From positions 186,001 through 250,000 of IMG/VR virus record IMGVR_UViG_3300044213_000107: a stretch of DNA of 64,000 bases, one strand, 5' to 3'. How positions within the stretch are numbered: the stretch's first letter is position 1; every line of letters begins with the position of its first letter. Shown here piece by piece: positions 3,496 to 59,700 of this stretch. The position numbers were made by a program, and so were the translations under genes. The notes under the pieces are model-generated. The model ran no database searches and was not told the origin of the DNA. It saw nothing but the letters and a program-made list of their open reading frames with translations.

Positions 3496-4616
3496 TGTTA
3501 GATATCAATAATTTTTGTTCATTACCTTTTCGGGGTATACAAATAGAATATGACGGTTCACTTAAACCGTGTTGCATGTTCAAACAAGAAAAAGAACCTA
3601 ATTATAAAAATTACACTGTAGACCAATTTGAACAATATTGGTCTGACAATAGTATTAGACAACGATTTATCGATAATAGTATTCCTGAAGGTTGCAAAAT
3701 TTGTTTTGATGATCAAATGATTACCACCGGAGTAAGATCGTTTACTAACAATTCATTAATTAAAAACACGCCAAATATTACAGTATCAGACTCACCGGAA
3801 CATATCGAAATTAAATTCGGAAACTATTGCAATTTAAAATGCATTATGTGTGGGCCATATGCTAGCAGTCAATTGGAAACAGAATATCGAACACATAAAG
3901 ACAAATTTGATGCTATCGAAATATATCAACCTTTGCTTAAACAATACTACTGGTGGGAGGATCCTGATACTTTAAAAAAAGTACAACAAATGGTAAAAAC
4001 TGCAAAGTATATAAGTTTCTCTGGAGGTGAGCCGTTATTAATTAATGGAATCTATGACATTTTAGATCATGCACCGAGGGATTGTGTTATAACAATAAGC
4101 ACAAACTTAACAAGATTAACAAACAAACACATAGAATATTTTCAAAAATTTAAAAATATAAGAATTAGAATAAGTTTAGATGGAATAGGCACTCAAGAAG
4201 AATATTTAAGATACGGCACCGATTGGGACAAATTAAATGCTAACATACAACAATTAATCTCTATAGAAGAAATTGATGTAGGGTTTACTTATTTATTGCA
4301 ACATACATCTGTTTATACATATCCAGAGTTATGGAATTATGTAAAATCTACTGATAAAAGTTTAATTGTATCGACAGTTTATGGAGGGTCGATATCTGAA
4401 GGACTTCTTACTATTAATAGTGCTCCAGAAAAAGATGTCGAATCTTTTAAAAATTGGATTAAATTAAATTCTACGCCACATAATAATATGATAAAGAATT
4501 GGATTGAATCTTACAAATTCAATCCAATCCTACTAGAAAAATTTAAAAAATACGTTACCGTTCTTGACCAGGTGCGTGGCACAAATTATCAAGCCACATT
4601 TAATCCAAATTGGTAA
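3495..4616 (+). CDS. radical SAM protein with SPASM/twitch-type Cys cluster
   Basis: CNLKCIMC motif, GGEP, N-terminal C...LKPCC...CKIC. Confidence 0.9.
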   Translation: MLDINNFCSLPFRGIQIEYDGSLKPCCMFKQEKEPNYKNYTVDQFEQYWSDNSIRQRFIDNSIPEGCKICFDDQMITTGVRSFTNNSLIKNTPNITVSDSPEHIEIKFGNYCNLKCIMCGPYASSQLETEYRTHKDKFDAIEIYQPLLKQYYWWEDPDTLKKVQQMVKTAKYISFSGGEPLLINGIYDILDHAPRDCVITISTNLTRLTNKHIEYFQKFKNIRIRISLDGIGTQEEYLRYGTDWDKLNANIQQLISIEEIDVGFTYLLQHTSVYTYPELWNYVKSTDKSLIVSTVYGGSISEGLLTINSAPEKDVESFKNWIKLNSTPHNNMIKNWIESYKFNPILLEKFKKYVTVLDQVRGTNYQATFNPNW

Positions 4617-8228: not shown

Positions 8229-9374
8229 TTATTCTAAAAAATATGGGTTACTTATGCATGCTTTGACACTTTTTCCCATCTGTGTTGGGTCATTTTTCCA
8301 ATAATCTGGAAGTGTTTTCCACCATTTATCTAATCCAAATTTCCAATTTTTTAATTGAACAGTTTCTTCTTGTAATTTATTTCTAAACCATATGTCTCGA
8401 CCTCCAAAAATTATGCTAGGATATTTCTTGGCTACAATTGCTGTTGGATCCCAATCAGGATATATTAATGTATGAAGACCATCAAGACTTAACCAATACT
8501 TAGTACCATTAAATTCTCTACATGCAATATTACTTGTTTTAAGAGAACAAAATGGTAATTGAGTTATATTGCCTGACAAATAACGCTTAATCATATGTGC
8601 TTGTTTTATTATTGTTTTTGGGAAGTTTGGCGACCAATAAAATAATTCATCAGCATAAGGTTGTTTTCCGGCCATTGCAGTTGCAGTTGTTGCATTATCA
8701 ATTATATCTAAAAATTGAAAATAAAACTTGTCATTTTTATGAAATACCCTCGGCTTATCAGATCCATGCATTACACAAACTTTTTTTCCGGAGTGTATCA
8801 TGTCTGCCCATTCCGGAACAGACATTACCCAATCTCGCATTAACATACCGTTTGGGTTCCAGCACATGTTTAGTTCATAAATCCAATCGAATTTAATCGT
8901 TTTACTTGCCCAGAGATCTAGTTGCATCTGTGTAATATCAAGATATCGAAATTTAAAATTTTGTTTTTGTTGATATTTTTGAACTAATGGTATTGCAGTC
9001 TCAAATATTTCTTCGCTGTAAAGACCAAGTTTATTACCATCTCCTTCGACATTTACCTTACACACTACTTCGTCAAGTTTAATGTCGTTTTTTATAAATG
9101 TATGAAAGATATTTCCACTATCTGGTCCACCGCTCAAACTTAATATAACATAATCATAACTATCTCGTATTTGTTGGGCACGTTGCCGATATAATTCTTC
9201 TAATGATTCCGTAGGTTCTGTGGTCCAATCATAACTACTAAACACAGCTTCATTAAAGTCCCAGTGCAGATGTGTGCCAGTTTTTTGCATCATTTCAATA
9301 GCTTCAAGCTTGCTATAAAATTTTAAATCGCCGACACGATAAACACCGAGTTTATCAGGGAAATCATTTGTCAT
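8229..9374 (-). CDS. PP-loop (adenine nucleotide alpha hydrolase superfamily) protein, substrate unknown
   Basis: LSLSGGPDSG PP-loop motif. Confidence 0.6.
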   Translation of the reverse strand: MTNDFPDKLGVYRVGDLKFYSKLEAIEMMQKTGTHLHWDFNEAVFSSYDWTTEPTESLEELYRQRAQQIRDSYDYVILSLSGGPDSGNIFHTFIKNDIKLDEVVCKVNVEGDGNKLGLYSEEIFETAIPLVQKYQQKQNFKFRYLDITQMQLDLWASKTIKFDWIYELNMCWNPNGMLMRDWVMSVPEWADMIHSGKKVCVMHGSDKPRVFHKNDKFYFQFLDIIDNATTATAMAGKQPYADELFYWSPNFPKTIIKQAHMIKRYLSGNITQLPFCSLKTSNIACREFNGTKYWLSLDGLHTLIYPDWDPTAIVAKKYPSIIFGGRDIWFRNKLQEETVQLKNWKFGLDKWWKTLPDYWKNDPTQMGKSVKACISNPYFLE

Positions 9375-9820: not shown

Positions 9821-10465
9821 TTATTCAAAAATGTTGTCTGGACTCATAACATGAATTTGTAATAATTCACGATATGGTATTTCTTTGTATTTCTTCCAAT
9901 TACTTGTGCAATGAACTTGCCGACCATTGAACAATACACCATCGCCGGCTACATAAGTGTAAACTCCATCAGCAGTTAGATAATCTACTAGATATTCGCC
10001 ATCATTAACACATGTATGATCTAAATCTTCAACTTCACTTAGATTACTTAACTTAGGCAATGTTTTAAAAACATCATTCCAGTTCATTACATAATCTCTA
10101 AACGCATCATTGTCTTGAAATTGTTCTTGCCATACTAGAGTTTTAAATTTAGGATTTGTATCCATGCTGATAACATATGTATAGCAAATACCTTCTTTGT
10201 CCCGGCCGTAGTCATCTATATGCAACTGATGTGCAAATGTTTGCCGTTGATACGCAGCCCATAAATTAGTTATATTTTTAAAATCCCGACGAGCAATATC
10301 TTCAATTATACGAAATTCGGGGGAGTCTTCGCGAATTTTTAATCTGTGATCCAACACTTCACCGTTAAGTTCATAGTTAACATATTTGTACCGTTCATTG
10401 TTTGTCCAGTAGGCTTTAAACTGTTCCACTTGATCCGGTGTTAGAATTTTTTCAATGTGCCTCAT
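9821..10465 (-). CDS. hypothetical protein, possible 2OG-Fe(II) oxygenase fold
   Basis: LHIDD ... QVHC ... R. Confidence 0.5.
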   Translation of the reverse strand: MRHIEKILTPDQVEQFKAYWTNNERYKYVNYELNGEVLDHRLKIREDSPEFRIIEDIARRDFKNITNLWAAYQRQTFAHQLHIDDYGRDKEGICYTYVISMDTNPKFKTLVWQEQFQDNDAFRDYVMNWNDVFKTLPKLSNLSEVEDLDHTCVNDGEYLVDYLTADGVYTYVAGDGVLFNGRQVHCTSNWKKYKEIPYRELLQIHVMSPDNIFE

Positions 10466-10683
10466 TGATTGCTTTTAACTCTTTTTAGATAATCTATACC
10501 AATTTTGCCTGCAGCAATTTCTGCAAGTGCAGTAGCAGATGGCCCACCAGCTTTGGCTACTTTTGGTTGATGTCCACGTTTAAGTTCACGTACTCTCGCG
10601 GCTGCAATTAATACTAAGTTAAATCTACCACCTACTTGTGCAGCAGCTTCGTCTGAACTATTGCGTGATGTAGTATTTACCAT
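10462..10683 (-). CDS. rpoZ: RNA polymerase omega subunit homolog
   Basis: GGRFNLVLIAAARVRELKRG...ALAEIAAGKI matches the omega core (NRFDLVLVAARRARQ...ALREI.EG). Confidence 0.88.
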   Translation of the reverse strand: MVNTTSRNSSDEAAAQVGGRFNLVLIAAARVRELKRGHQPKVAKAGGPSATALAEIAAGKIGIDYLKRVKSNQ

Positions 10684-10747: not shown

Positions 10748-10823
10748 TGGTGCCGCCTCTAGGTATCGAACCTAATTCTCTAGTGCTTCAAACTAGCGTG
10801 AGGACCTCCTTCACCAAAGCGGC
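10748..10823 (-). tRNA. tRNA-Phe(GAA)
   Basis: CTAGT-TTGAAGC-ACTAG anticodon arm, CCA. Confidence 0.9.
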
Positions 10824-10826
10824 ATA

Positions 10827-10901
10827 TGGTCCGGCCACCAGGAATCGAACCTGGATTACAAGATTAGAAGTCTCGGGTATTATCCATTATACGATGGCCA
10901 G
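10827..10901 (-). tRNA. tRNA-Arg(TCT)
   Basis: CGAGA-CTTCTAA-TCTTG, CCA. Confidence 0.95.
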
Positions 10902-10936
10902 CGTCTGTAAAATGGTGCGCTCGGAGGGACTTGAAC
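10898..10936. repeat. 39-bp direct repeat, copy 1 (tRNA-CAT T-loop to CCA, spacer, first 4 nt of tRNA-Arg)
   Basis: CCAGCGTCTGTAAAATGGTGCGCTCGGAGGGACTTGAAC; 37/39 identical to 12937-12975. Confidence 0.92.
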
Positions 10937-10971
10937 ATTTTTATTATTCATTATACGAACGCTAGAGATTT

Positions 10972-11409
10972 TTATAGTATAGCCGATAACCAATCAGTAT
11001 ACAATAAATTTTTATGTATTTTTATTTTCATTATCCCAGGAAAACTCATAAAGGAATGAGTCTTCCATACCTTGTTGCTTGTATCTTTGTACACAGATAT
11101 TTTAGATATGCTATTGATAAAATCTATAGTATCCACTGTTAACCTTTCCAACACAATATATAAATCTTCAGTTATATCATTGTTGGAATCAATTTTTGTG
11201 TCTGTTAGTTCCTTATTAACAAATTCTATTGAAACACTGGTTAAATCAGAATTAACAGGAATATTATAATGATGTATTTCTTCTATATCATTTTTATGTT
11301 CAATCGCATATTCGTACACACATAATTTATTGTTTATAAAAATGTTATATACAGGTTTTTTAGTAGACGTTGAATGGAGTAGCAACGATAGGGATAACTT
11401 TTTTGTCAT
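10972..11409 (-). CDS. hypothetical protein in the tRNA-inserted cassette
   Basis: 145-aa ORF overlapping the radical SAM C-terminus. Confidence 0.65.
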   Translation of the reverse strand: MTKKLSLSLLLHSTSTKKPVYNIFINNKLCVYEYAIEHKNDIEEIHHYNIPVNSDLTSVSIEFVNKELTDTKIDSNNDITEDLYIVLERLTVDTIDFINSISKISVYKDTSNKVWKTHSFMSFPGIMKIKIHKNLLYTDWLSAIL

Positions 11410-12892
11410 TTTGCTTGTGCTCTAAATATTTTTGCTCTAATCCTTCGATCTCTAATAATTTTTCATTTTGTCGGTTGATTTCAGAATAATACCCATATTC
11501 CTGCATTACTTCAACAAATCTTTTCCATCTGTTTACTCTAACATCAAATGTATTGTTTACAAATTGTGTGCTAGTCCAGAAAAAATCGCCCCACTGGTCA
11601 TGCCTATTATGTTCAAGACCGTATTCATCTGCATATCGTTGCATGAACCCGCTTCCATTTGTTAGCACCATTGGCAAAGATAAAAATACTTTTATCATAT
11701 TGTTAGTTGTTAAGTGGGCATGAGTTTTAAGTAAATCGATACTTTGTTGGAAATCATCTTCCGTTTCGGTGGGATATCCTACAAACATTAACCATACTTG
11801 TTTTATACCTTTATCAAAACAATTTTCAGCAAACCAAGTTATATCTTCATTACTGAATTTCTTCTTCATATCGTTACGAACTTTTTCACTACCCGACTCT
11901 ATGCCTACTTTAAACAATTTCGCTCCGGCAGTTGATGCTAGTTTAAAATCTGATTCAGGCATGGATATTTTAGATCGACAAATGGCATAGCCAGAATATT
12001 CTATTCTATTGGGAATTTCTTCAGTTAATACCGTATTCATTAAACGATAATTTGTGATACTCCCATTCACAAGATTGTCAGTAAACTCAAACTTATTAAT
12101 ACCATATTTAGAATGTGTTTCGATAATTTCACGTGCTATATCATTACCTTTTCTGTAGACGAATTTTGGCCAAGACGACTGCACATCGCAAAATGTACAC
12201 TCTCTGACACATCCTTTACTGCCAGTAACCGGTATAGTTAAATTTTTATTTTTGTAACTTGGATACAATGAAAAATTATATCCTTCCCATGAAGGTGCAG
12301 GTGTGTTACTAAGTGCCTCTGCAGATACAGGAGGTGCAGTGTGTATTCCTTTTTTCTTATTTTGGATGACAGAAATCAAATCATTTTCCGCATCCCCACG
12401 ATACACAGAATCTATCGGAAGATAATCCATGAAATAATTAGCATAATTAATTCCACTGATTCGTTCGTTGTTATCTAGACCTCTGCCACCTATCATTATG
12501 TAACTGTTAGGCGATATCTCTCGAACTATAGTGGATAAAGGTACAACAAAATCTAAACTTTGGCTAGAAAATACAGACAATAAAATTGTATCCGGATTAA
12601 AATTTTTTATTTGTTGTTTAACAGCTTTTCTAAGCCATTTTAAAATTTTTAAAATATTAATGCTATTTGCCGGTCTGTACCCTCTTATGGCAAACATATC
12701 TACTATTATATTCCATTGATCTGCAAATTCGCTAAACAAATCAATATTTAGGTCCCAAACTTTACTATTGTATCCATTATGTTTTAAAATGCCGTTTATA
12801 ACTGCAGGGCCGTATGGAACATCTCCGAAACTTTCTATTCCTGTATTAACAACTCTTACTGGAACTACTATTGTAAGGACATTTTTATTCAT
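11360..12892 (-). CDS. cobalamin-binding (class B-like) radical SAM protein
   Basis: N-terminal B12-binding-like domain (PYGPAVI...GG...GDAE), KGCVRECTFC, GIESGS, FVGYPTET. Confidence 0.85.
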   Translation of the reverse strand: MNKNVLTIVVPVRVVNTGIESFGDVPYGPAVINGILKHNGYNSKVWDLNIDLFSEFADQWNIIVDMFAIRGYRPANSINILKILKWLRKAVKQQIKNFNPDTILLSVFSSQSLDFVVPLSTIVREISPNSYIMIGGRGLDNNERISGINYANYFMDYLPIDSVYRGDAENDLISVIQNKKKGIHTAPPVSAEALSNTPAPSWEGYNFSLYPSYKNKNLTIPVTGSKGCVRECTFCDVQSSWPKFVYRKGNDIAREIIETHSKYGINKFEFTDNLVNGSITNYRLMNTVLTEEIPNRIEYSGYAICRSKISMPESDFKLASTAGAKLFKVGIESGSEKVRNDMKKKFSNEDITWFAENCFDKGIKQVWLMFVGYPTETEDDFQQSIDLLKTHAHLTTNNMIKVFLSLPMVLTNGSGFMQRYADEYGLEHNRHDQWGDFFWTSTQFVNNTFDVRVNRWKRFVEVMQEYGYYSEINRQNEKLLEIEGLEQKYLEHKQNDKKVIPIVATPFNVY

Positions 12893-12936
12893 AGTAATAT
12901 TTAGTAGACTAAACCAACCCAGTATACTATCTTATA

Positions 12937-12975
12937 CCAGCATCTGTAAAATGGTGCGCTTGGAGGGACTTGAAC
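12937..12975. repeat. 39-bp direct repeat, copy 2
   Basis: CCAGCATCTGTAAAATGGTGCGCTTGGAGGGACTTGAAC. Confidence 0.92.
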
Positions 12976-13028
12976 CCCCGACCAAGCGATTATGAGTCGC
13001 CTGCTCTGACCAACTGAGCTACAAGCGC
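12952..13028 (-). tRNA. tRNA-CAT (Ile2/lysidine or elongator Met)
   Basis: GGCGA-CTCATAA-TCGCT, canonical cloverleaf, CCA. Confidence 0.93.
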
Positions 13029-13034
13029 ATTAAC

Positions 13035-13120
13035 TGGTGCGACTGGCCGGAATCGAACCGGCACGGGAAAATCCCGGCAGATTTTAAGTCTGCTGCGGCT
13101 ACCGATTACGCCACAGTCGC
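13035..13120 (-). tRNA. tRNA-Leu(TAA)
   Basis: GCAGA-CTTAAAA-TCTGC, long variable arm. Confidence 0.95.
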
Positions 13121-13311: not shown

Positions 13312-13387
13312 TGGTGGTCAGAAGAGCACTCGAAGCTCCACATTCATCCTTATGAGGGATGCTCTCTTCCTCTTAAGATATCTGACC
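13312..13387 (-). tRNA. tRNA-CAT (probably elongator Met), atypical D arm
   Basis: CATCC-CTCATAA-GGATG, T arm GGAGC-TTCGAGT-GCTCT, CCA. Confidence 0.85.
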
Positions 13388-13476
13388 ATATAAAAACACA
13401 CTCTTATCAATATCCCAGCGGTCGACTCGGTTTAACAGGGCCCAACGTAGAGGGTCGGGCGAATGTGTTTTTATAT
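13388..13476 (-). ncRNA. candidate structured RNA of about 89 nt filling a tRNA spacer
   Basis: 16-bp closing stem ATATAAAAACACATTC/GAGTGTGTTTTTATAT abutting tRNA ends on both sides; inner CCCGAC/GTTGGG hairpin. Confidence 0.6.
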
Positions 13477-13513
13477 GGTAGGAGCACGGGGATTTGAACC
13501 CTGAACCTATCAA
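13476..13513 (-). pseudogene. tRNA 3'-half remnant fused to the HNH stop codon
   Basis: TTGAT-AGGTT-CAGGG-TTCAAAT-CCCCG-TGCTCCT-A-CCA, with no matching 5' half found. Confidence 0.7.
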
Positions 13514-14085
13514 TGACTGAGTAGTCGTTTTGCCCTGGCGTGGCTAGCACCCTTGTCAGGCAACCCAACACTTCTCAATGCTTCTGAAATAGTATTATGT
13601 TTCTTAACAGCCTCTAATAATACTTCATCCGGAACAATTCTTTTTTTGTTATTTCTTCCTCGCCAAGTCTTAGTTTTTGAATGACAATTAGGACAAATAC
13701 ATTCTAAATTAGATCGGTCATTATTTTTTGTATCACCGTCTTTATGCTCTAATTCTAAAACAATAGGATCACCCATCCATTCTGAAATTCCACAATGGTT
13801 ACACTTATGACCTTGCTCTTCTAATACCCGTCGCTTTCTATTCTCGCTACCTAATTTTTCAAAAGGTGTGGATTGGTATTTCTCTAATGCCCAAGCTGTT
13901 GTCTTGGCACTTCGTAATCTTATTTCCTCGGTTGTAATTGGAGTTTTTCTAGTCCAACGACCGGCATTAGCAATACTTTTCTTCTTTTTGCTTTCTTCAG
14001 TAAACACTCTACTATTTGAACATTTTCTAGAACAGAATGTTCCAGGCTTAGTATGTGCTGTATTACATTTAGGACAATTTTTCAT
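13510..14085 (-). CDS. HNH homing endonuclease
   Basis: CPKC...FCSRKC zinc finger; CNHC...LELEHKDGDTKNNDRSNLECICPNCH. Confidence 0.92.
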   Translation of the reverse strand: MKNCPKCNTAHTKPGTFCSRKCSNSRVFTEESKKKKSIANAGRWTRKTPITTEEIRLRSAKTTAWALEKYQSTPFEKLGSENRKRRVLEEQGHKCNHCGISEWMGDPIVLELEHKDGDTKNNDRSNLECICPNCHSKTKTWRGRNNKKRIVPDEVLLEAVKKHNTISEALRSVGLPDKGASHARAKRLLSH

Positions 14086-14149: not shown

Positions 14150-14223
14150 TGGTAGGCCCGGAGGGTACTGACCCCTCTTTTACGGATTAAAAGTCCGTTA
14201 CTTCACCTTAAAGTTTCAAGCCC
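14150..14223 (-). tRNA. tRNA-Lys(TTT) with non-canonical T-loop
   Basis: ACGGA-CTTTTAA-TCCGT; T arm GAGGG-GTCAGTA-CCCTC. Confidence 0.8.
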
Positions 14224-17247: not shown

Positions 17248-18033
17248 ATGAACACCTGTCAACAATGTACTTCATTATTTGCTCAAACTCCTGGAACGTA
17301 CGGTAAATTTTGCTCTGTATCCTGTAGTAGTAAGTTTAATAATAAAATTAGACGCCAACAGACTACGGAAAACTATTTATTAAATCCAAAAGTTTGTAAA
17401 AATTGCAATTCAATCATAAATTATTCTCAAAGAAAAAGTAATATTTTTTGTAGCCGATCCTGCGCCGCTGTGTTTAATAATGCCAAAAAAGATTGGACTA
17501 ATATTAAAACTGGGCCGACACCTAAACAAAAGGCACCGAAATTAAAAAGAAAAGCGAGAACTAATACTATCCCAGATGCAGACGGACCATACACTATTAT
17601 ATACCTATGCACTTGCAAATTTACTGGAAAAAAATGGTACTCCCCAACAGTTAAGACCATACACCCATCAACAATATCAACTAAAAAATTGTATTCTTAT
17701 CAATGTAGATTTAACTTTGGTATTAAGTCGTACCCTGAATGGTTTGCTTATGCATCAAATTTAATAAACACTAACGGCTGGTACTCAGCCTCTAATAGAG
17801 GTAATAATTTATCTGGATGTTCTCGTGATCATTTGTATTCAGTATCGGATGGATACAAAAACAATATAGATCCTAAAATAATATCTCATCCTGCAAACTG
17901 TGAGATAATTCCGCACAGGAAAAATCAGAGTAAAAACAAGACTTCGTCGATTACATTAGAAGAACTAAAAGAAAGAATCAAAAAATTTAATCAAAAATAT
18001 TTGGAGATGCCAGATGGGGTCGAGCCATCCTAG
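17248..18033 (+). CDS. HNH-family endonuclease with two Cys-rich zinc-finger repeats
   Basis: CQQC...FCSVSC and CKNC...FCSRSC; SRDHLYSV...HPANCEIIPHRKNQSK; start taken at ATG 17248 (TAAATA-N5-ATG) rather than TTG 17230. Confidence 0.8.
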   Translation: MNTCQQCTSLFAQTPGTYGKFCSVSCSSKFNNKIRRQQTTENYLLNPKVCKNCNSIINYSQRKSNIFCSRSCAAVFNNAKKDWTNIKTGPTPKQKAPKLKRKARTNTIPDADGPYTIIYLCTCKFTGKKWYSPTVKTIHPSTISTKKLYSYQCRFNFGIKSYPEWFAYASNLINTNGWYSASNRGNNLSGCSRDHLYSVSDGYKNNIDPKIISHPANCEIIPHRKNQSKNKTSSITLEELKERIKKFNQKYLEMPDGVEPS

Positions 18034-18075
18034 AAAGTTTTGCAGGCTTCCACCTAACCGCTCGGACATGGCATC
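18002..18075 (-). tRNA. tRNA-Cys(GCA) with non-canonical T-loop
   Basis: GATGCCA/TGGCATC, U73, loop CTGCAAA, T arm GATGG-CTCGACC-CCATC; overlaps the HNH C-terminus antisense. Confidence 0.85.
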
Positions 18076-18220: not shown

Positions 18221-19402
18221 TTATACTGGGAATACTTCCCTAAAATTTGTTTTTCTTATACGATCTAACATACCAATATATTCGTTAAATGTATTGATTA
18301 AGTTAGGATTGTGCACAGCATTTTCCAATGAGTTTATTGTAAATTTAATCGCTGATATATAGTTATATCGCAGATAATGCGTTAAAGGAATCTGAGATTT
18401 TAGTTCTTGCAAATCGAGAATAAATTGATTTCTTTGTGCATCTGTTAACACTTCTATGTCTAAATATGGTTTAGACATTAATCTACCAACATTCACAGCA
18501 TATGAGTTATCAACACAATATTGAATTAATGGTATCAACGCCCAGAAACTTGTATACTGTAGTGTATGGCCAATGGTAATAGGATTATTAGGCCATGTAG
18601 GATTAGGACGTGTGGCTAATTTTTTAATATTAGCATCTACGGTTGCCCACTCACTACCATATCTAACATATTCTGTATGTTGCTCGGTACCTTCTAAACT
18701 TACAACTATTGCAACAGATTTAAATTTTGAAATACAATCGTATACTTCATCTGTTAATGTTGTACCGTTTGTGGTAACTGTTAAATTTAATTGCTCCGGA
18801 TGCGGAATGCTTTTTAACATTGCAATAGCATTAGGAGTTATAAGTGGCTCGCCACCTGTTAAAAAAATATGTTCAACATTTTCTAATAGTCGAGGCTCCA
18901 GCTCTTGATATTCATCTGTTTCAAACCAATTTCTTTTTTGTATAAATTGATCATCATGAGTTAAGTGAACAAAATTTTTATATTGTTCTCTATTCATTTT
19001 TACTTCAGTTTCTATACTAGAACTGCAATAAGGATTACACATTATACATTTTAAATTACAGTGATTGCCAAATTCAACATGTAAATGTTTTATGCCATAA
19101 GATTTATCTGGTGAAAAATCTTGTCTAATAAAATTTTCAAATGTGCGATTACCATTTATTCTGTACGACGATGATCCATTGTCTTCTTCGTCCCAACAAC
19201 GACTACAACCTTCATGTCTTTGGCCATTGTCTAGTTCTTGACTAATTTTAATAACTTTTGTTTGTCGCCAACGATCAAATTGATCATATTTATCAACCAA
19301 ATTACCATCTTTTATTTGATAATTACAACAAGGTGTAAGTGTGCCGTCTGTGCGAATATTAACACCAATATGCGAATGTATACAAAATGTTTCTTGATTC
19401 AT
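18221..19402 (-). CDS. radical SAM protein with SPASM/twitch-type cluster
   Basis: CNLKCIMC, TGGEP, LTPCC...CSRC; start likely ATG 19402 (TATAAATA-N5-ATG); track gives 19423. Confidence 0.9.
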   Translation of the reverse strand: MNQETFCIHSHIGVNIRTDGTLTPCCNYQIKDGNLVDKYDQFDRWRQTKVIKISQELDNGQRHEGCSRCWDEEDNGSSSYRINGNRTFENFIRQDFSPDKSYGIKHLHVEFGNHCNLKCIMCNPYCSSSIETEVKMNREQYKNFVHLTHDDQFIQKRNWFETDEYQELEPRLLENVEHIFLTGGEPLITPNAIAMLKSIPHPEQLNLTVTTNGTTLTDEVYDCISKFKSVAIVVSLEGTEQHTEYVRYGSEWATVDANIKKLATRPNPTWPNNPITIGHTLQYTSFWALIPLIQYCVDNSYAVNVGRLMSKPYLDIEVLTDAQRNQFILDLQELKSQIPLTHYLRYNYISAIKFTINSLENAVHNPNLINTFNEYIGMLDRIRKTNFREVFPV

Positions 19403-19432
19403 AGTGATATTTATATGCAACATATATTGTAA

Positions 19433-26083: not shown

Positions 26084-27157
26084 TCACTCCTCGATATTTT
26101 CTACTTGTTCTAATACGGGCTCGTCCCTATGTGGATGCTCTGTAATATCTTTCATTACTTGATCAAGGCATCCGTCTTCATTTCTTTCCCATGCTTTGCG
26201 GAATTTTTTAATCACAGTGCCATCAAATAAAGTGCATTTAAGACTATTACCATCTTTAGTTAGAATTCCTTTTCCTTCAAACAAATCAACAAGGCCCGAT
26301 GTTGGACTCATTCCTTGCTCATAAGGAATCTTAACCTGTACGCTTTCAAATGGTTTGGCATAGCGTGTCTTCATAATCTTACAAGCGGCGCGGATACCTT
26401 TAACTTCTGAGATCTTGTTGCCATCTTCGTCTTCTTTGAGTTTTAACTTACGCATAGCAACGACAATAGAGCTAGCATAGATAAAACCTTGACCGCCCGA
26501 GATTTTATCATCGGGGTCAAACATATCTTGGCTAGCGTACGTGTGATTAGTTGCAACTAAACCGATATTTAAAGCACCAATCATATTAACACAGTTACGA
26601 ACAAGTGCTGTTAATGCTTTAGGCTTACGACCTAAGTCGCCTTTTAAATCGCCTGCTTCAAATTGATTAACATCTGTAGGTGTTAACAACATACCTAGAC
26701 TGTCTAGTACAAACAATACTTTAGGACGAGATTCTTCAGGTAACGTTTTATATTCCTTAACAAACTCACTGATCATTTTAGCAACGTCATCAATCATTGC
26801 CATGTTAAGTTTAAGAAGTTTGTCTTCGCTGGTATCTACCCCAAGCGCATGCAACCATGCTTCATCAAGTGCGTTTTCTGTATCAATTAGAATAGGATAG
26901 ATACCTTGTGCCTGTGCGTTTTTAATTAAGTTGCCCGAACAGATAAACGATTTACCTGCGCCCGACTCGCCTGCAAATACAGTAACCTTGCCCATTGGTA
27001 TACCTTTGTAGAAGTCCCCGGAGATAAGATAGTTTAGTGCATAGTTGTTTGTTGATATCCAATCAGTGGGGTCATTAAATCCTACACTAATACCATCGAT
27101 ACTTTTTGTAATACTTTTTCTAAATTTGCTTACGTCAAATGGTTTTGCTATTGCCAT
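26084..27157 (-). CDS. uvsX: RecA-like recombinase UvsX
   Basis: AGESGAGKS Walker A, IDTENA, VLDSLG, NHTY, SGG.GF.YASS. Confidence 0.95.
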   Translation of the reverse strand: MAIAKPFDVSKFRKSITKSIDGISVGFNDPTDWISTNNYALNYLISGDFYKGIPMGKVTVFAGESGAGKSFICSGNLIKNAQAQGIYPILIDTENALDEAWLHALGVDTSEDKLLKLNMAMIDDVAKMISEFVKEYKTLPEESRPKVLFVLDSLGMLLTPTDVNQFEAGDLKGDLGRKPKALTALVRNCVNMIGALNIGLVATNHTYASQDMFDPDDKISGGQGFIYASSIVVAMRKLKLKEDEDGNKISEVKGIRAACKIMKTRYAKPFESVQVKIPYEQGMSPTSGLVDLFEGKGILTKDGNSLKCTLFDGTVIKKFRKAWERNEDGCLDQVMKDITEHPHRDEPVLEQVENIEE

Positions 27158-34841: not shown

Positions 34842-36014
34842 TCAAGTATTTATCAGTAGTTGGTAGAACTCAGGGTGTGTGTCTGCATATGAAGTGTCTG
34901 TTGCGGCATCATATTTTTTAACATAAGATAAAAAATCAGCAGAACTAAAATTTTCATCTACAATAATGTAATCTGCCAAAAAATCCAGTTCTTTAATACC
35001 GGCAGTTTTATCTAATATGGCAGTTCTAAGACTAGAACTCACTTCTTGTGCCGAGCACTTTCCGAGTCCGGTGTTAAAAGGTGTAAAGTTTTTATAGACA
35101 GCAGGGAATTCTGTAGATAAAAAATTACACAATTCTGAAATGTAAAATATATTATACAGGCTGTAGGTTATGTTAAAACATAATTCTACTCTAGGTCCAC
35201 AATTGGCTTGGAACCATTTAATATTTTCTACTACTTGATCCCATTTTGCGCCACGGCGTTGATATTCAAATCTTTTGCCGATGTCATCTATACTAAAAAA
35301 TAATCTAACTTTTTCAACAGAATTTAATATTTCTAAAAATTCCGGAGTCGGCAAGGTTGTGGCATTTGTAAATATCCAAATAGTTAGATCATCGTAGCTG
35401 CGATATTTTCCCATGTTTCGAAAAAATTCATAGTATGCCGGTTCCATAAATATTTCGCCGCCTTGCAGTTGTACCAATTTAAGACTTTTAAATAATGCAG
35501 GATCATCAATTACAGGACGGTCATTCTTTTTATATTTCATTCCAGGCCAAATAAATCCCCAGTGTTTTTCGTACAAAGGAATCCAACTACTGCTGTTAAA
35601 AGGACCACATATAGCACAACTTAGATTACAAAGGTTTCCTAGATTTAAATCAATCCTTGTTAAAACTTCTACTTCACTAGTGCCGTGCTCTCTAATAGCA
35701 TGATATCTTCCACTGGCGTGAGGATTTATTTGATCTTGCTGATAACAATGGCCGCAACCAGGATGCTTTTCGTTATTTTTATTTTTTTCTCGTAGCTCAA
35801 CAATAAATGGTGCAGAATTATAATCATTGTAAATTTCATTGCTGCGAGAAATAAACATATCCTCACCTTTAGGCTTATAATCCCTATTAAAATAACAACA
35901 GGGTTTATAATCAAAGCGATCGTTCAGTTGATTTATGTATGCTCTATTCCATATCTCAGGGCAATAGACATCAGGATCTACATCGGTGTGATGTATCTTT
36001 ATTGGATATTCCAT
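34842..36014 (-). CDS. radical SAM protein with SPASM/twitch-type cluster
   Basis: CNLSCAIC, QGGE, KPCC...CGHC. Confidence 0.88.
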   Translation of the reverse strand: MEYPIKIHHTDVDPDVYCPEIWNRAYINQLNDRFDYKPCCYFNRDYKPKGEDMFISRSNEIYNDYNSAPFIVELREKNKNNEKHPGCGHCYQQDQINPHASGRYHAIREHGTSEVEVLTRIDLNLGNLCNLSCAICGPFNSSSWIPLYEKHWGFIWPGMKYKKNDRPVIDDPALFKSLKLVQLQGGEIFMEPAYYEFFRNMGKYRSYDDLTIWIFTNATTLPTPEFLEILNSVEKVRLFFSIDDIGKRFEYQRRGAKWDQVVENIKWFQANCGPRVELCFNITYSLYNIFYISELCNFLSTEFPAVYKNFTPFNTGLGKCSAQEVSSSLRTAILDKTAGIKELDFLADYIIVDENFSSADFLSYVKKYDAATDTSYADTHPEFYQLLINT

Positions 36015-56729: not shown

Positions 56730-59700
56730 TTAAACTGGTACGTACTCTCTAAATAAGCGTACACTATTTGTTGCATTTACCGCAGTAAATTGTAATAATG
56801 TATTACCACCGCTTACTGTTGCAGTAACTACACCCAAGTTGCCTCCGGTTTGTACGATGCCATATGATGTAACATATGCAGATCCACCACCTTGTACAAC
56901 CAACACTTCTTGTGATTGATAGTTTCCACCGTTAGTAACCTGTACAATGTACTTGGCAGTACGATATGAAGTATTACTAAATGTGTCTAGTGTAGTAGCA
57001 GTACCAGCACTGGCTACGCTTACGTTGGCTTCTTGTGTTACTAAACCACCACTTGTTGGCATTGTAAAGCGTGCTGTTGCTGCACCAGAACCGCTATTAA
57101 ACTGTAGACCTGCTATATCATCTGGTGTAATATTTACATTACCAGTTGTACTTGCTAATCCACTAATAGTTGTAGTTGTAGTCAACATTCTAACGTCAAT
57201 GACATCACCGGCAGCAGGAGCTTCAGTAAATGTCAATGTTGTATTAGAAACGCTGTAAGCTAGTGTTGGGATTTGAACCACACCGTTAATACTTACAATA
57301 GTACCAGCAGTTGTTGCAGACTGGCTTAATGTAAATGTAGTTGTTGATCCGTCGCCGTTAAACTGCTGATCTGCAATAATTGTAAACGTTTGTGCGCTTG
57401 CTTGCCATATACTTCCTGTGTAAACTTCAAACTGGTTAGTTGTGCTGTTATAACGGAACATACCTTGTGTAGCAGTTCCATATCCACCTGAACCAGGACG
57501 TTGAGCAGTAGTACCAACTGGTAGTAAAATAGAATCAGTTGTATTGAATACTACTTTAGCACCAGGAACTAAAGTACTTGCGGTTGCACTGTTACCAAAA
57601 ATAACACTGTCGTAAGTACTGCTTGGTCTTGCCCAAACCAAAGTTTGGTCATTTACACCACGGATGATTGTATCAAAGTTAGCGTTATTAGTGTTGTTAA
57701 ACACTGCTCCGCCATTATGATATGTATTGCCACTTATACCAACTCCACCAATAACAACCAACGCACCAGTTGTAGCATTTGTGCTTGCGGTGCCTGCGGC
57801 TGCAACAATGTTACCATTGTGGATTGCAAAGCCTGTTGTTGTGATATTTGCAGTACTAGCAATATAACCACCGTTAATAACTGCATTAGCACTATAGAAG
57901 TTAGTTGCAGTCAAGTTAGTTACTGTACCAGTTGTGATCGTTGCATTTGTCAATGCACTGATATAACCACCACTGATTACAACGTTACCAGAACTGAAGT
58001 TTGTAGCAACTGCAGTTGTTAGGTTAGCACTTGTTGAACCAAATGTTGCGATATTACCTGTAGCAGCACTTAGACCACTTAGGTTAGTTGCAGTACCACC
58101 TGTGATAACTGCATTAGCTGTACTAAAGTTTGTTGCTTGTAGTGTTGTAACTGCAGCAGTTGTGATCGTTGCATTTGTCAATGCACTGATATAACCACCA
58201 CTGATTACTGCATTACCAGTACTGAAGTTTGTAACACTGCCGGTTGTGGCATATACATTGGCCAAACCACTTGCATAACCACCTGTAATCGCAGCATTTG
58301 CAGTACTAAAGTTAGTTGCCACTGCAGTTGTCAAGTTAGCACTTGTACTGTTCAATGAAGTAACATAACCAGTTGCTGCTGCAATATTAGTCAAGTTATT
58401 AATATAACCGCCAGTGATAACTGCATTACCAGAACTTAGATTTGTTGCTTGAGCAGTTGTAGCATATACATTAGCCAAACCACTTGCATAACCACCAGTT
58501 ACTGCAATGTTACCAGAACTGAAGTTAGTTGCTTGAGCAGTTGTTGCAGTTAGGTTTGTTAAGCCAGTTGCTGAACCACCAGTTACTGCAATGTTACCAG
58601 AACTGAAGTTAGTTGCTTGAGCAGTTGTTGCAGTTAGGTTTGTTAAGCCAGTTGCTGAACCACCAGTTACTGCAATGTTACCAGAACTGAAGTTAGTTGC
58701 TTGAGCAGTTGTTGCAGTTAGGTTTGTTAAGCCAGTTGCTGAACCACCTGTTATTTGTGCATTACCAGTACTGAAGTTGGTTGCTTGAGCAGTTGTAGCA
58801 TATACATTGGCCAAACCACTTGCATAACCACCTGTCACTGCAATATTACCAGAACTGAAGTTAGTAGCAACTGCAGTTGTTAGGTTAGCACTTGTAGATC
58901 CAAATGTTGCAATGTTACCAGTAGCAGCACTTAGACCACTTAGACCAGTAATTGAACCACCTGTTACATATGCATTACCTGTGCTGAAGTTAGTAGCAAC
59001 TGCAGTTGTTAGGTTAGCACTTGTTGAACCAAATGTTGCAATATTACCTGTTGCGGCACTCAATCCACTCAAGTTGGTAGCAGTACCGCCAGTAATTACT
59101 GCGTTAGCAGTTGATAGGTTTGTTGCTTGTATGGTTGTTACAGTTTCGTTGGTAATTGTTGCAGTTGTGATTGTTGCATTTGTTAACGCACTAATATAAC
59201 CACCACTGATAACAACGTTTGGTGAACTAAAGTTAGCTGCATACAATGTTGTTACATTACCAGTAGTACTATTCATTGAAGCAACATAACCAGTTGCTGC
59301 AGTAATATTTGCCAAGTTATTGATATAACCACCAGTTACTACTGCATTAGCAGTATTGATACTACCTGTGTAGAGAGTAGTAATATTACCAGCAGTTGCA
59401 CCAAATGTTGCAATATTACCTGTTGCCGCACTCAATCCACTCAAGTTGGTAGCAGTACCACCTGTGATAACTGCGTTAGCAGTTGATAGGTTTGTTGCTT
59501 GTAGTGTTGTAACTGCAGCAGTTGTGATCGTTGCATTTGTCAATGCGCTGATATAACCACCACTGATTACTGCATTACCGGTACTAAAGTTAGTTGCTTG
59601 AGCAGTTGTAGCATATACATTAGCCAAACCACTTGCATAACCACCTGTTACTGCAACATTTGGTGAGCTAAAGTTTGTTGCATATAATGTAGTAAATGTA

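What the first reader, a model, noticed from the sequence alone, without database searches (positions are those of the whole stretch)
10898..12975. B12 radical-SAM cargo inserted into the tRNA array with a 39-bp target duplication and no integrase
Seen: a 2-kb two-gene cassette (510-aa cobalamin-type radical SAM plus a 145-aa ORF) with its own TAAATA-N5-ATG start. It is flanked by 39-bp direct repeats (2 mismatches) that comprise the tRNA-CAT T-loop to CCA, the spacer and the first 4 nt of tRNA-Arg. Removing one repeat and the insert restores adjacent tRNA-CAT and tRNA-Arg genes. No integrase is present in the window. Inferred: a metabolic moron captured by att-like or UvsX-mediated recombination at a phage tRNA, and possibly excisable. 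Its position raises the untested idea that it modifies tRNA.
Basis: partly seen in the sequence, partly recalled or inferred. Interest (0 to 1): 0.72.

Follow-up and report, generated by a model that had tools for sequence, protein, structure and literature searches.

The report
Radical-SAM gene pair inside phage tRNA array
A two-gene radical-SAM module that is common in aquatic phages sits between two tRNA genes of a freshwater jumbo phage, flanked by a real 39-base duplication of the tRNA junction; it looks like a scar of ordinary phage recombination rather than an integrase site, and nothing yet ties the enzyme to tRNA.

Summary
A 39-nt direct repeat (37/39 identical) at 10898-10936 and 12937-12975 flanks exactly 2,000 bp. 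That stretch holds a 510-aa class-B-type radical SAM gene and an overlapping 145-aa gene. Deleting the insert and one repeat rejoins a CAT-anticodon tRNA (probably tRNA-Ile2) to tRNA-Arg(TCT) with an 11-nt spacer, which is normal for this array. An independent assembly of the source sample spans both junctions.

No tyrosine or serine recombinase and no DDE transposase was found in the 260-kb record. The insert has no terminal inverted repeats. A UvsX/RecA-like gene lies in the window.

The cargo is not an odd moron. The enzyme plus its small partner is a conserved, virus-dominated module found in about 85 contigs. The partner is a CBM60-like beta-sandwich, and modelling supports binding between the two proteins. 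Seven of the eight closest lineages carry the module inside tRNA arrays, each between different tRNAs. Most distant relatives carry it among T4-like core genes.

The insert ends with a 24-nt fragment of a foreign tRNA-Arg, which points to recombination between arrays. No empty site or excision junction was found, and close relatives in three other lakes keep the insert. The tRNA-modification idea has no support beyond position.

The parts
12937..12975 (-). Upstream repeat copy (R1). It forms the functional 3' end of the CAT tRNA (24 nt), followed by the 11-nt spacer and CTGG.
10898..10936 (-). Downstream repeat copy (R2). It is an orphan 3' piece of the CAT tRNA, followed by the spacer and the true first 4 nt of tRNA-Arg. 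It serves as the 5' leader of tRNA-Arg.
12952..13028 (-). tRNA with anticodon CAT, probably tRNA-Ile2 (lysidine type).
   Evidence: The best E. coli matches are annotated tRNA-Ile, at 81% identity.
10827..10901 (-). tRNA-Arg(TCT), intact.
11360..12892 (-). 510-aa radical SAM enzyme. It has an N-terminal Rossmann (B12-domain-like) fold, a CX3CX2C barrel and a C-terminal helical domain.
10972..11409 (-). 145-aa partner, a CBM60/CBM36-like beta-sandwich with a conserved C-terminal helix. It overlaps the enzyme gene by 50 nt, as in the relatives.
10942..10965 (-). 24-nt fragment of a second, homeologous tRNA-Arg 5' end, located 6 nt after the partner's stop codon. It matches the resident tRNA-Arg at 20 of 24 positions. 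Its first 10 nt are closer to the tRNA-Arg of L090.
12898..12903 (-). TAAATA motif 5 nt before the ATG. It resembles a T4 late promoter and is shared by about 40% of genes in the window.
26084..27157 (-). UvsX/RecA-like recombinase, the candidate enzyme for homology-driven exchange.
   Evidence: PF00154, 51.5 bits
13476..13507 (-). Orphan tRNA 3' fragment directly after the HNH endonuclease gene (13510-14085). This is a second recombination scar in the same array.

Best explanation
The thing is a conserved phage two-gene module. It consists of a class-B-architecture radical SAM enzyme and a small CBM60-like beta-sandwich protein. The small protein is predicted to dock by its C-terminal helix on the enzyme's N-terminal domain.

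In this jumbo-phage lineage the tRNA region is the place where accessory genes accumulate. I infer the following history. A 2,000-bp piece was copied from another array, or from a co-infecting relative, in which the module was followed by a tRNA-Arg(TCT). It was joined into the resident tRNA-Ile2(CAT)/tRNA-Arg(TCT) junction by the phage's own recombination and repair machinery, not by a site-specific recombinase or transposase.

The two joins lie 39 nt apart on the target, so the junction sequence is present twice. Only such overlapping joins keep both tRNAs intact with their 3' trailer and 5' leader, so selection would favour them. The two copies have since diverged by 2 of 39 positions, and the arrangement is fixed in the sampled population.

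The module is probably transcribed from its own late-type TAAATA motif and by read-through of the tRNA operon. The partner gene is probably translationally coupled to the enzyme gene.

The 39-nt repeats could support rare loop-out deletion by UvsX-type recombination, as PeSL repeats do in T4-type phages. This is not shown. The enzyme's chemistry is unknown. My best guess is a radical, possibly methylating, reaction on a sugar-bearing substrate rather than on tRNA.
For: Structure of the site:
- The repeat, its sharp ends and an independent contig across both junctions.
- No PF00589, PF00239, PF00665 or PF01609 in 260 kb.
- No terminal inverted repeats: the match between the insert ends scored no better than 30% of shuffles.
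- A RecA/UvsX-like gene in the window.
- A foreign tRNA-Arg 5' fragment at the insert's end. In the whole record the resident 24-mer, allowing up to 5 mismatches, matches only itself and this fragment.

Relatives:
- L091 has the module followed 5 nt later by tRNA-Arg(TCT).
- L090 has an uninterrupted Ile2-like(CAT)-Arg(TCT) pair with the module about 290 nt further on.
- An HNH gene in the same array is also followed by an orphan tRNA 3' fragment.

Module conservation:
- 461 homologues, the best at 63% identity, and 77 IMG/VR loci.
- The partner lies downstream in about 50 loci.
- The 47-59-nt overlap recurs in L007, L089 and L091.

Protein modelling:
- Complex model score 0.68 against a best control of 0.29. 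That mark was reached by 58 of 80 solved complexes and 2 of 110 mismatched pairs.
- The enzyme fold is nearest to TsrM, AprD4, MgmA, BchE and Fom3.
- The partner fold is nearest to CBM60/CBM36.

Precedent: short (<50 bp) repeats that flank ORFan cassettes and make mini-circles without an integrase in T4-type phages (PMC2839356).
Against: - The order of events cannot be reconstructed uniquely. Neither junction shows microhomology. A segmental duplication of the tRNA pair followed by decay of the redundant copies would give a similar picture.
- No empty site in a close relative was found, so 'insertion' rests on logic and on a distant relative whose tRNAs are only 69-73% identical.
- The record is about 74% complete, so a recombinase could lie in the missing part.
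- The complex score comes from my own alignments, and one of the three runs scored only 0.26.
- The sugar-substrate guess rests on a weak fold match (TM 0.5-0.6) with no Pfam hit.
Confidence: 0.6

Rival explanations
1. This is an integrase-type island at a tRNA attachment site. The 39-nt repeat is the att core, and the cassette was inserted, and can be excised, by a site-specific recombinase encoded elsewhere or supplied by the host or a co-infecting element.
For: The duplicated segment starts in the T-loop and runs through CCA, the classic target of tRNA-directed integrases. Its edges are sharp. The record is only about 74% complete.
Against: - No PF00589 or PF00239 hit in 260 kb.
- The insert has no recombinase gene.
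- The core would have to extend across a spacer into the next tRNA.
- The same module in seven other lineages has no such repeat.
- No empty site or circle was seen.
- A foreign tRNA-Arg fragment sits at the insert's end.
Confidence: 0.07
2. This is a segmental duplication followed by decay. The tRNA-CAT/tRNA-Arg pair once stood on both sides of a module that was already resident, for example after unequal crossing-over between misaligned arrays. The redundant tRNA-Arg upstream and the redundant tRNA-CAT downstream were later deleted down to the present stumps.
For: - tRNA arrays of the relatives are heavily reshuffled, and the module sits between different tRNAs in each.
- In L007 the module is also preceded by a CAT tRNA, and in L091 it is followed by tRNA-Arg(TCT).
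- The stretch from the tRNA-Arg-like fragment through R2 folds into a 7-bp stem ending in ACCA, with z-scores of -2.6 to -4.
Against: - The sequence after R1 shows no significant remnant of tRNA-Arg: 30% of shuffles align as well.
- The Arg-like fragment is out of register with R2 as a tRNA.
- This route needs more steps than a single insertion.
Confidence: 0.2
3. The module is a tRNA-modifying enzyme kept in the array because it acts on the co-transcribed tRNAs. The duplicated tRNA piece is a functional processing or recognition element.
For: - Seven of the eight closest lineages (45-63% identity) carry the module inside tRNA arrays on the tRNA strand. The gene starts 7-60 nt after a tRNA.
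- MiaB is among the structural neighbours.
- R2 together with the upstream fragment folds into an acceptor-like stem with ACCA.
Against: - 65 of 77 viral loci of the family have no tRNA within 5 kb, and their neighbours are T4-like core genes.
- The enzyme has no N-terminal cysteines and no TRAM domain.
- MiaB-family scores are far below their cut-offs.
- The partner resembles a carbohydrate-binding module, not an RNA-binding fold.
- The array also holds unrelated genes such as an HNH endonuclease and a twitch radical SAM, as expected of a hyperplastic region.
Confidence: 0.1
4. This is an assembly artefact: a chimeric join at a repeated tRNA sequence.
For: The data come from a metagenome assembly, and tRNA sequences recur.
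Against: - The exact shared runs are only 18 and 14 nt.
- An independent contig of the source run spans 10776-13060 without a difference.
- Contigs from other lakes bridge the R1 junction (X2, 12545-12992) and reach into R2 (X3, 10907-11234).
Confidence: 0.01

Closest known systems
PeSL cassettes of T4-type phages (Arbiol et al. 2010, PMC2839356; PMC4122927)
   Same: Accessory ORFs in hyperplastic regions are flanked by short (<50 bp) direct repeats. There is no integrase. Phage recombination machinery is held to insert and delete them.
   Different: Here the repeat is a duplicated tRNA junction, not a promoter plus stem-loop. It occurs only once and is not a genome-wide motif. No indel polymorphism or mini-circle was seen.
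tRNA-gene attachment sites of integrases (prophages, genomic islands)
   Same: The 3' part of a tRNA gene is duplicated on both sides of the inserted DNA, and the tRNA stays intact.
   Different: No recombinase was found. The duplication runs through the spacer into the next tRNA. The host replicon is itself a lytic-type jumbo phage. The insert carries a fragment of another tRNA.
Class B (cobalamin-domain) radical SAM enzymes: TsrM, Fom3, BchE, HpnP, MgmA, AprD4
   Same: A three-part architecture with the CX3CX2C motif. Foldseek E-values are 1e-14 to 1e-22 and TM is about 0.6.
   Different: Sequence identity is 13-17%. Every NCBIfam hit is far below its cut-off. The family is virus-dominated. 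It comes with a dedicated beta-sandwich partner. Cobalamin binding is not shown.
T4-like phages with many radical SAM genes (Campylobacter phages CP220/CPt10, PMC2853527; radical SAM cassettes of pelagimyophages, PMC7029224)
   Same: Many radical-SAM genes occur per genome (14 hits here). They behave as exchangeable cassettes of unknown role.
   Different: This is a different host environment and lineage. Homology of this particular enzyme to those genes was not tested.
T4 tRNA gene region with freestanding homing endonuclease genes (from my own knowledge of T4 segB)
   Same: Protein genes and an HNH endonuclease are interspersed among phage tRNAs. The array acts as a recombination hot spot.
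   Different: No endonuclease gene lies inside or next to the insert; the nearest one begins 535 nt beyond the upstream repeat copy.

Membership tests
Integrase-mediated tRNA-att island | Tyrosine or serine recombinase encoded by the element or the genome | tested here: not met
   PF00589 and PF00239 gave no hit at E<=1 in the 260-kb record, and the controls were positive. The record is about 74% complete.
Integrase-mediated tRNA-att island | Direct repeat that contains the 3' end of a tRNA at both borders | tested here: met
   A 39-nt repeat that includes the tRNA from the T-loop to CCA.
Integrase-mediated tRNA-att island | Empty site or excised circle detectable | tested here: inconclusive
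   No 2,039-nt skip in contigs of four runs. No pattern hit in viral or JGI metagenome contigs. Contigs drop rare variants, and raw reads were not available.
Transposon / insertion sequence | Transposase gene | tested here: not met
   PF00665 and PF01609 were negative. The insert holds only the two genes.
Transposon / insertion sequence | Terminal inverted repeats | tested here: not met
   The best local match between the two insert ends is 8 nt, and 30% of shuffles do as well.
PeSL-type cassette of T4-type phages | Short direct repeats flanking an accessory cassette, with no integrase | tested here: met
PeSL-type cassette of T4-type phages | Repeat made of an early promoter plus a stem-loop terminator, recurring across the genome | tested here: not met
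   The repeat is tRNA-derived and occurs only as this pair.
PeSL-type cassette of T4-type phages | Presence/absence polymorphism between close relatives, and mini-circles | tested here: inconclusive
   Relatives in three other samples keep the cassette. Circles are not testable with contigs.
Class B cobalamin-dependent radical SAM | CX3CX2C cluster motif in a radical SAM barrel | tested here: met
   C228, C232 and C235 are invariant in 48 sequences. PF04055 4.5e-17.
Class B cobalamin-dependent radical SAM | N-terminal Rossmann-type B12-binding domain | tested here: inconclusive
   The fold matches TsrM, Fom3 and BchE. PF02310 scores only 18 bits against a cut-off of 32.1.
Class B cobalamin-dependent radical SAM | Binds cobalamin | not testable with these tools
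   Needs purified protein.
MiaB/MtaB/RimO methylthiotransferases (tRNA/ribosome modifiers) | N-terminal UPF0004 domain with three cysteines for a second cluster, and a C-terminal TRAM domain | tested here: not met
   There is no cysteine in residues 1-227 (sequence). NCBIfam MiaB-family scores are 22-37 bits against cut-offs of 251-357.
CBM60/CBM36 carbohydrate-binding modules (partner protein) | Beta-sandwich fold of the family | tested here: inconclusive
   TM 0.50-0.63 and Foldseek E-values of 1e-3 to 1e-4. The Atlas feature score for CBM60 is 0.86, which is a lead only.
CBM60/CBM36 carbohydrate-binding modules (partner protein) | Sequence match to PF16841 and calcium/sugar-binding residues | tested here: not met
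   No Pfam, PHROG or NCBIfam hit. The binding residues were not examined.

The most novel reading that the evidence does not exclude
Duplicated tRNA junctions could serve phage tRNA arrays as portable recombination sites, the tRNA-array counterpart of PeSLs. They would let gene cassettes loop out as small circles and re-enter other arrays. The cargo here would be a widespread, uncharacterised viral heterodimer (class-B radical SAM plus a CBM60-like subunit) that acts on the co-transcribed tRNAs or on another RNA or sugar substrate that no known enzyme modifies.
Probability: 0.1. Interest if true: 0.7.

Novelty: new variant of a known kind. Interest (0 to 1): 0.4.

Why it matters
This is a clean, datable example of how accessory genes are moved within phage tRNA arrays without a dedicated recombinase, and of how both neighbouring tRNAs survive the event. 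More usefully, it flags a large, virus-dominated and wholly uncharacterised enzyme pair that recurs in aquatic T4-like and jumbo phages. These phages carry up to 14 radical-SAM genes each. Finding its substrate would open a piece of phage biochemistry that has been noted since 2010 but never explained.

Tried and rejected
Searches that found nothing:
- GenBank phages hold no close relative of the region. Only tRNA matches appeared, and the enzyme hit only Streptomyces phage SF3 at 26% identity.
- Single-protein scans of IMG/VR with the enzyme and with the neighbouring 214-aa ORF found nothing.
- Empty-site and repeat patterns: 0 hits in viral contigs and 0 in JGI metagenome contigs.
- A 31-nt tRNA-Arg pattern: 0 hits in viral contigs.

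Weak or inconclusive leads:
- Read laying gave joints 10901->13035 (X2, plus 6 nt) and 10894->13035 (X3, plus 14 nt). These would put tRNA-Leu next to tRNA-Arg. Their sides are only about 30 nt at an 85% likeness limit, so they may come from other phages. I left this as a lead.
- The joint 10936->12987 (X4) is best read as a homologous tRNA from another organism.
- tRNA orthology between the window and relatives is mostly too weak (55-75% identity) to trace array history.
- The sequence after R1 is not a detectable remnant of tRNA-Arg.

Ideas rejected:
- Flanking repeats are not a general feature of the cassette.
- The window has no GOLLD RNA.
- The gp32 Pfam search was uninformative because its controls failed.
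- The literature search for phage B12 radical SAM enzymes linked to tRNA found nothing specific.
Full report
**1. What is in the sequence**

The window is bases 186001-250000 of a 260,723-bp IMG/VR virus record, estimated to be 74% complete. Runs that hold it are labelled freshwater metagenomes.

A minus-strand array of tRNA genes runs from about 9.7 to 18.2 kb. ARAGORN called 25 genes and Rfam found 2 more.

Within the array, the repeat finder reports a 39-nt direct repeat at 10898-10936 and 12937-12975, with 37 of 39 positions identical. Read on the coding strand, the order of features is:
- the CAT tRNA (13028-12952);
- an 11-nt spacer;
- CTGG;
- 44 nt of leader with TAAATA-N5-ATG;
- a 510-aa ORF (12892-11360);
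- a 145-aa ORF that overlaps it by 50 nt (11409-10972);
- 6 nt;
- a 24-nt piece that resembles the 5' end of tRNA-Arg (10965-10942; 20 of 24 positions match the real one);
- AAAAT;
- the second repeat copy, which holds the last 24 nt of the CAT tRNA, the spacer and CTGG;
- the rest of an intact tRNA-Arg(TCT), which ends at 10827.

Identity between the two repeat copies begins and ends abruptly. The material between them is exactly 2,000 bp.

**2. The repeat is real and not chance**

Outside one internally repetitive giant ORF, the whole record has about ten direct repeats of 28 nt or more within 10 kb of each other. Five block shuffles gave none.

The two copies share exact runs of only 18 and 14 nt, which is too short to mislead a de Bruijn assembler. 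A separately assembled contig of the source run covers 10776-13060 with no difference.

Contigs from three other freshwater samples also hold the cassette. They hold about 40-47% of the sampled 31-mers, which I estimate as roughly 2-3% divergence. One bridges the upstream junction (12545-12992). One runs from inside the downstream copy into the small ORF (10907-11234).

In the source sample the cassette's depth (97) is not below that of its flanks (64 and 102). There is therefore no sign of a large sub-population without it.

**3. No dedicated mobility gene**

Pfam searches of all six frames of the record found none of the following, while the control genomes responded:
- tyrosine integrase;
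- resolvase or serine recombinase;
- rve-type transposase;
- DDE_Tnp_1 transposase.

The insert ends are not inverted repeats. A RecA/UvsX-like gene lies at 26084-27157. An HNH endonuclease gene sits in the array at 13510-14085.

**4. The cargo is a conserved phage module**

The enzyme has 461 homologues in the large protein collection, the best at 63% identity. It has 77 confirmed loci in IMG/VR. The ESM Atlas neighbours of both proteins are almost all viral clusters.

A homologue of the small ORF follows the enzyme gene in about 50 of the fetched loci. The overlap of 47-59 nt recurs in L007, L089 and L091. This argues that both reading frames are real and are translationally coupled.

- **Enzyme model.** AlphaFold gives a confident model (pLDDT 88). 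Its nearest solved and Swiss-Prot folds are class-B radical SAM enzymes: TsrM, MgmA, AprD4, OxsB, BchE, Fom3 and HpnP. MiaB comes behind them.
- **Family assignment.** No curated family is reached. The B12-domain Pfam hit is below threshold. There are no cysteines before residue 228, so it is not a methylthiotransferase.
- **Partner model.** The partner models as a beta-sandwich with a C-terminal helix (pLDDT 88). It weakly resembles the calcium-dependent carbohydrate-binding modules CBM60 and CBM36.
- **Complex model.** The model supports binding with a score of 0.68 against a best control of 0.29. That mark was reached by 58 of 80 solved complexes and 2 of 110 mismatched pairs. The counts hold only roughly because my own alignments were used, and one of the three runs scored 0.26. 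The partner's conserved C-terminal helix lies on residues 66-159 of the enzyme.

**5. Where the module sits in relatives**

I examined eight lineages with 45-63% enzyme identity. Seven carry the module inside a tRNA array on the tRNA strand, with the gene starting 7-60 nt after a tRNA. The flanking tRNAs differ each time:

| Lineage | tRNA before the module | tRNA after the module |
|---|---|---|
| L002 | a tRNA found only by Rfam (365-436), downstream of Thr(TGT) | Asn |
| L004 | Gly | Ser |
| L007 | Met(CAT) | Ala (the next tRNA called) |
| L089 | Gly | Leu |
| L090 | Ser | Trp |
| L091 | Phe | Arg(TCT) |

The eighth lineage (L088) has the module near a tmRNA and not in an array.

Among the 77 IMG/VR loci (25-61% identity), 65 have no tRNA within 5 kb. 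Their recurrent neighbours are T4-type genes:
- large terminase, gp32, UvsX and the gp46/47 nuclease;
- a segE-type endonuclease;
- several other radical SAM genes.

The link to tRNAs is therefore a property of one clade. In that clade the tRNA region also holds unrelated accessory genes, so it behaves as the hyperplastic region.

The record as a whole has 14 radical-SAM hits. This recalls the T4-like Campylobacter phages with 11-12 such genes (PMC2853527). It also recalls the 'radical SAM cassettes' that vary between pelagimyophages (PMC7029224).

**6. How the arrangement most likely arose**

Three observations guide the reading.
- **Uninterrupted pair in a relative.** L090 has an Ile2-like(CAT) tRNA followed after 7 nt by a tRNA-Arg(TCT). 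That tRNA-Arg has the same unusual CTGGC...GCCGGACCA acceptor as in the window. The L090 module lies about 290 nt further on. An uninterrupted pair therefore exists in the clade.
- **Donor context in a relative.** In L091 the module is followed after 5 nt by tRNA-Arg(TCT). In the window the module is followed after 6 nt by a 24-nt fragment of a tRNA-Arg. In the whole record the resident 24-mer, allowing up to 5 mismatches, matches only itself and this fragment. The fragment's first 10 nt match the L090 tRNA-Arg better (9/10) than the resident one (7/10). The inserted DNA thus brought a piece of its former neighbour with it.
- **Repeat unique to this lineage.** None of the relatives has a comparable repeat around the module. 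The HNH gene in the same array is likewise followed by an orphan tRNA 3' fragment that matches no resident tRNA.

I therefore read the 39-nt duplication as the by-product of two joins made by general recombination and repair. On the downstream side the homeologous tRNA-Arg sequence may have guided the join. Selection allowed only products in which the CAT tRNA keeps its 3' end and tRNA-Arg keeps its 5' end and leader. With an 11-nt spacer, such joins will usually overlap.

The steps themselves are inferred. No microhomology is visible at either junction. A duplication-and-decay route remains possible.

The 5% divergence between the copies, and the presence of the cassette in all sampled populations, suggest that the event is not recent.

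Loop-out through the repeat is mechanistically plausible in a phage with UvsX-type recombination. In T4-type phages, patches of homology under 50 bp suffice, and PeSL repeats yield mini-circles (PMC2839356). I found no trace of it here.

**7. Function**

Position alone suggested tRNA modification. Against it stand the family's wider distribution, the absence of MiaB-type features and the carbohydrate-module-like partner.

I commit to the following, with low confidence (about 0.25). The pair is a heterodimeric radical SAM enzyme in which the beta-sandwich subunit helps to hold a sugar-bearing substrate.

Expression is probably from the TAAATA motif. That motif precedes 20 of 49 genes in the window, against the one or two I estimate from its overall frequency. 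Read-through of the tRNA operon probably contributes too.

**8. Verdict**

It is unsupported on 'att-like' and 'moron', and speculative on tRNA modification.

This is a new variant of a known kind of event: repeat-flanked cassette shuffling in T4-type phages. It carries a member of a large, unstudied family of viral enzyme pairs.

Noticed in passing
whole record G000; in the window 3810-4193(+), 11729-12220(-), 18608-19078(-), 35169-35645(-): The 260-kb phage record has 14 radical-SAM domain hits, 13 of them above the Pfam cut-off, scattered over the genome. That is more than the 11-12 reported as 'highly unusual' for Campylobacter phages CP220/CPt10.
   Followed up: partly
window 18221-19423 (-): A twitch-domain radical SAM protein (NF033640, 255 bits) lies directly beside tRNA-Ser. 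A BLAST cluster of ~400-aa radical SAM proteins that is present in this stretch of the window, and probably includes this ORF, co-occurs with the class-B enzyme in 32 loci, sometimes as 4-5 copies in a row.
   Followed up: partly
window 8229-9374 (-): A 381-aa protein with a PP-loop motif (SGGPDSG) lies next to the tRNA array. It has only a weak PHROG match to PAPS-reductase-type ATPases. It could be a tRNA-thiolation or lysidine-type enzyme, given the tRNA-Ile2-like gene nearby.
   Followed up: no
window 10462-10683 (-); also L002:9670-9903, L088:7640-7876, L066: A phage-encoded protein that resembles RNA polymerase omega/Rpb6 (PF01192, 4e-10) recurs close to the module in several relatives.
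   Followed up: no
window 13385-13507 (-): After the HNH gene comes an orphan tRNA 3' fragment (13476-13507). A 19-nt inverted repeat (13385-13403 / 13461-13479) encloses 57 nt just before the next tRNA. It may be a structured RNA or a processing element.
   Followed up: no
whole window, upstream of ORF starts: TAAATA (compare the T4 late promoter TATAAATA) lies within 40 nt upstream of 20 of 49 ORFs. It is often only 4-8 nt from the start codon with no Shine-Dalgarno sequence, which hints at leaderless or very short-leader late messages.
   Followed up: partly
window 56730-63830 (-): A giant 2,366-aa ORF is built of many diverged repeats, with common offsets in multiples of 84 nt. It accounts for nearly all long direct repeats in the record.
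   Followed up: no
L007:7330-7790; tmRNAs in L007, L088, L089, L091: One relative carries a GOLLD RNA (193 bits; gathering score 150) about 200 nt upstream of the module. Several relatives encode tmRNAs next to their arrays. The window has neither.
   Followed up: partly
window 14153-14223 (-) and 18005-18075 (-): Rfam found two further tRNA genes that ARAGORN missed (44 and 38 bits). The first reads as tRNA-Lys(TTT).
   Followed up: no
window 10901/13035 (contigs of runs X2 and X3): Contigs in two other lakes appear to join tRNA-Leu(TAA) directly to tRNA-Arg(TCT), with 6 or 14 other letters between. That would skip both the CAT tRNA and the cassette. The aligned sides are short, so these may be other phages.
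   Followed up: partly
G000:C1:75087-75123 and 75387-75423 (outside the window): A 37-nt direct repeat with 1 mismatch, 300 nt apart, is AT-rich and promoter-like. It is the only other short repeat pair of this kind outside repeat-rich stretches (presumably coding; not examined).
   Followed up: no
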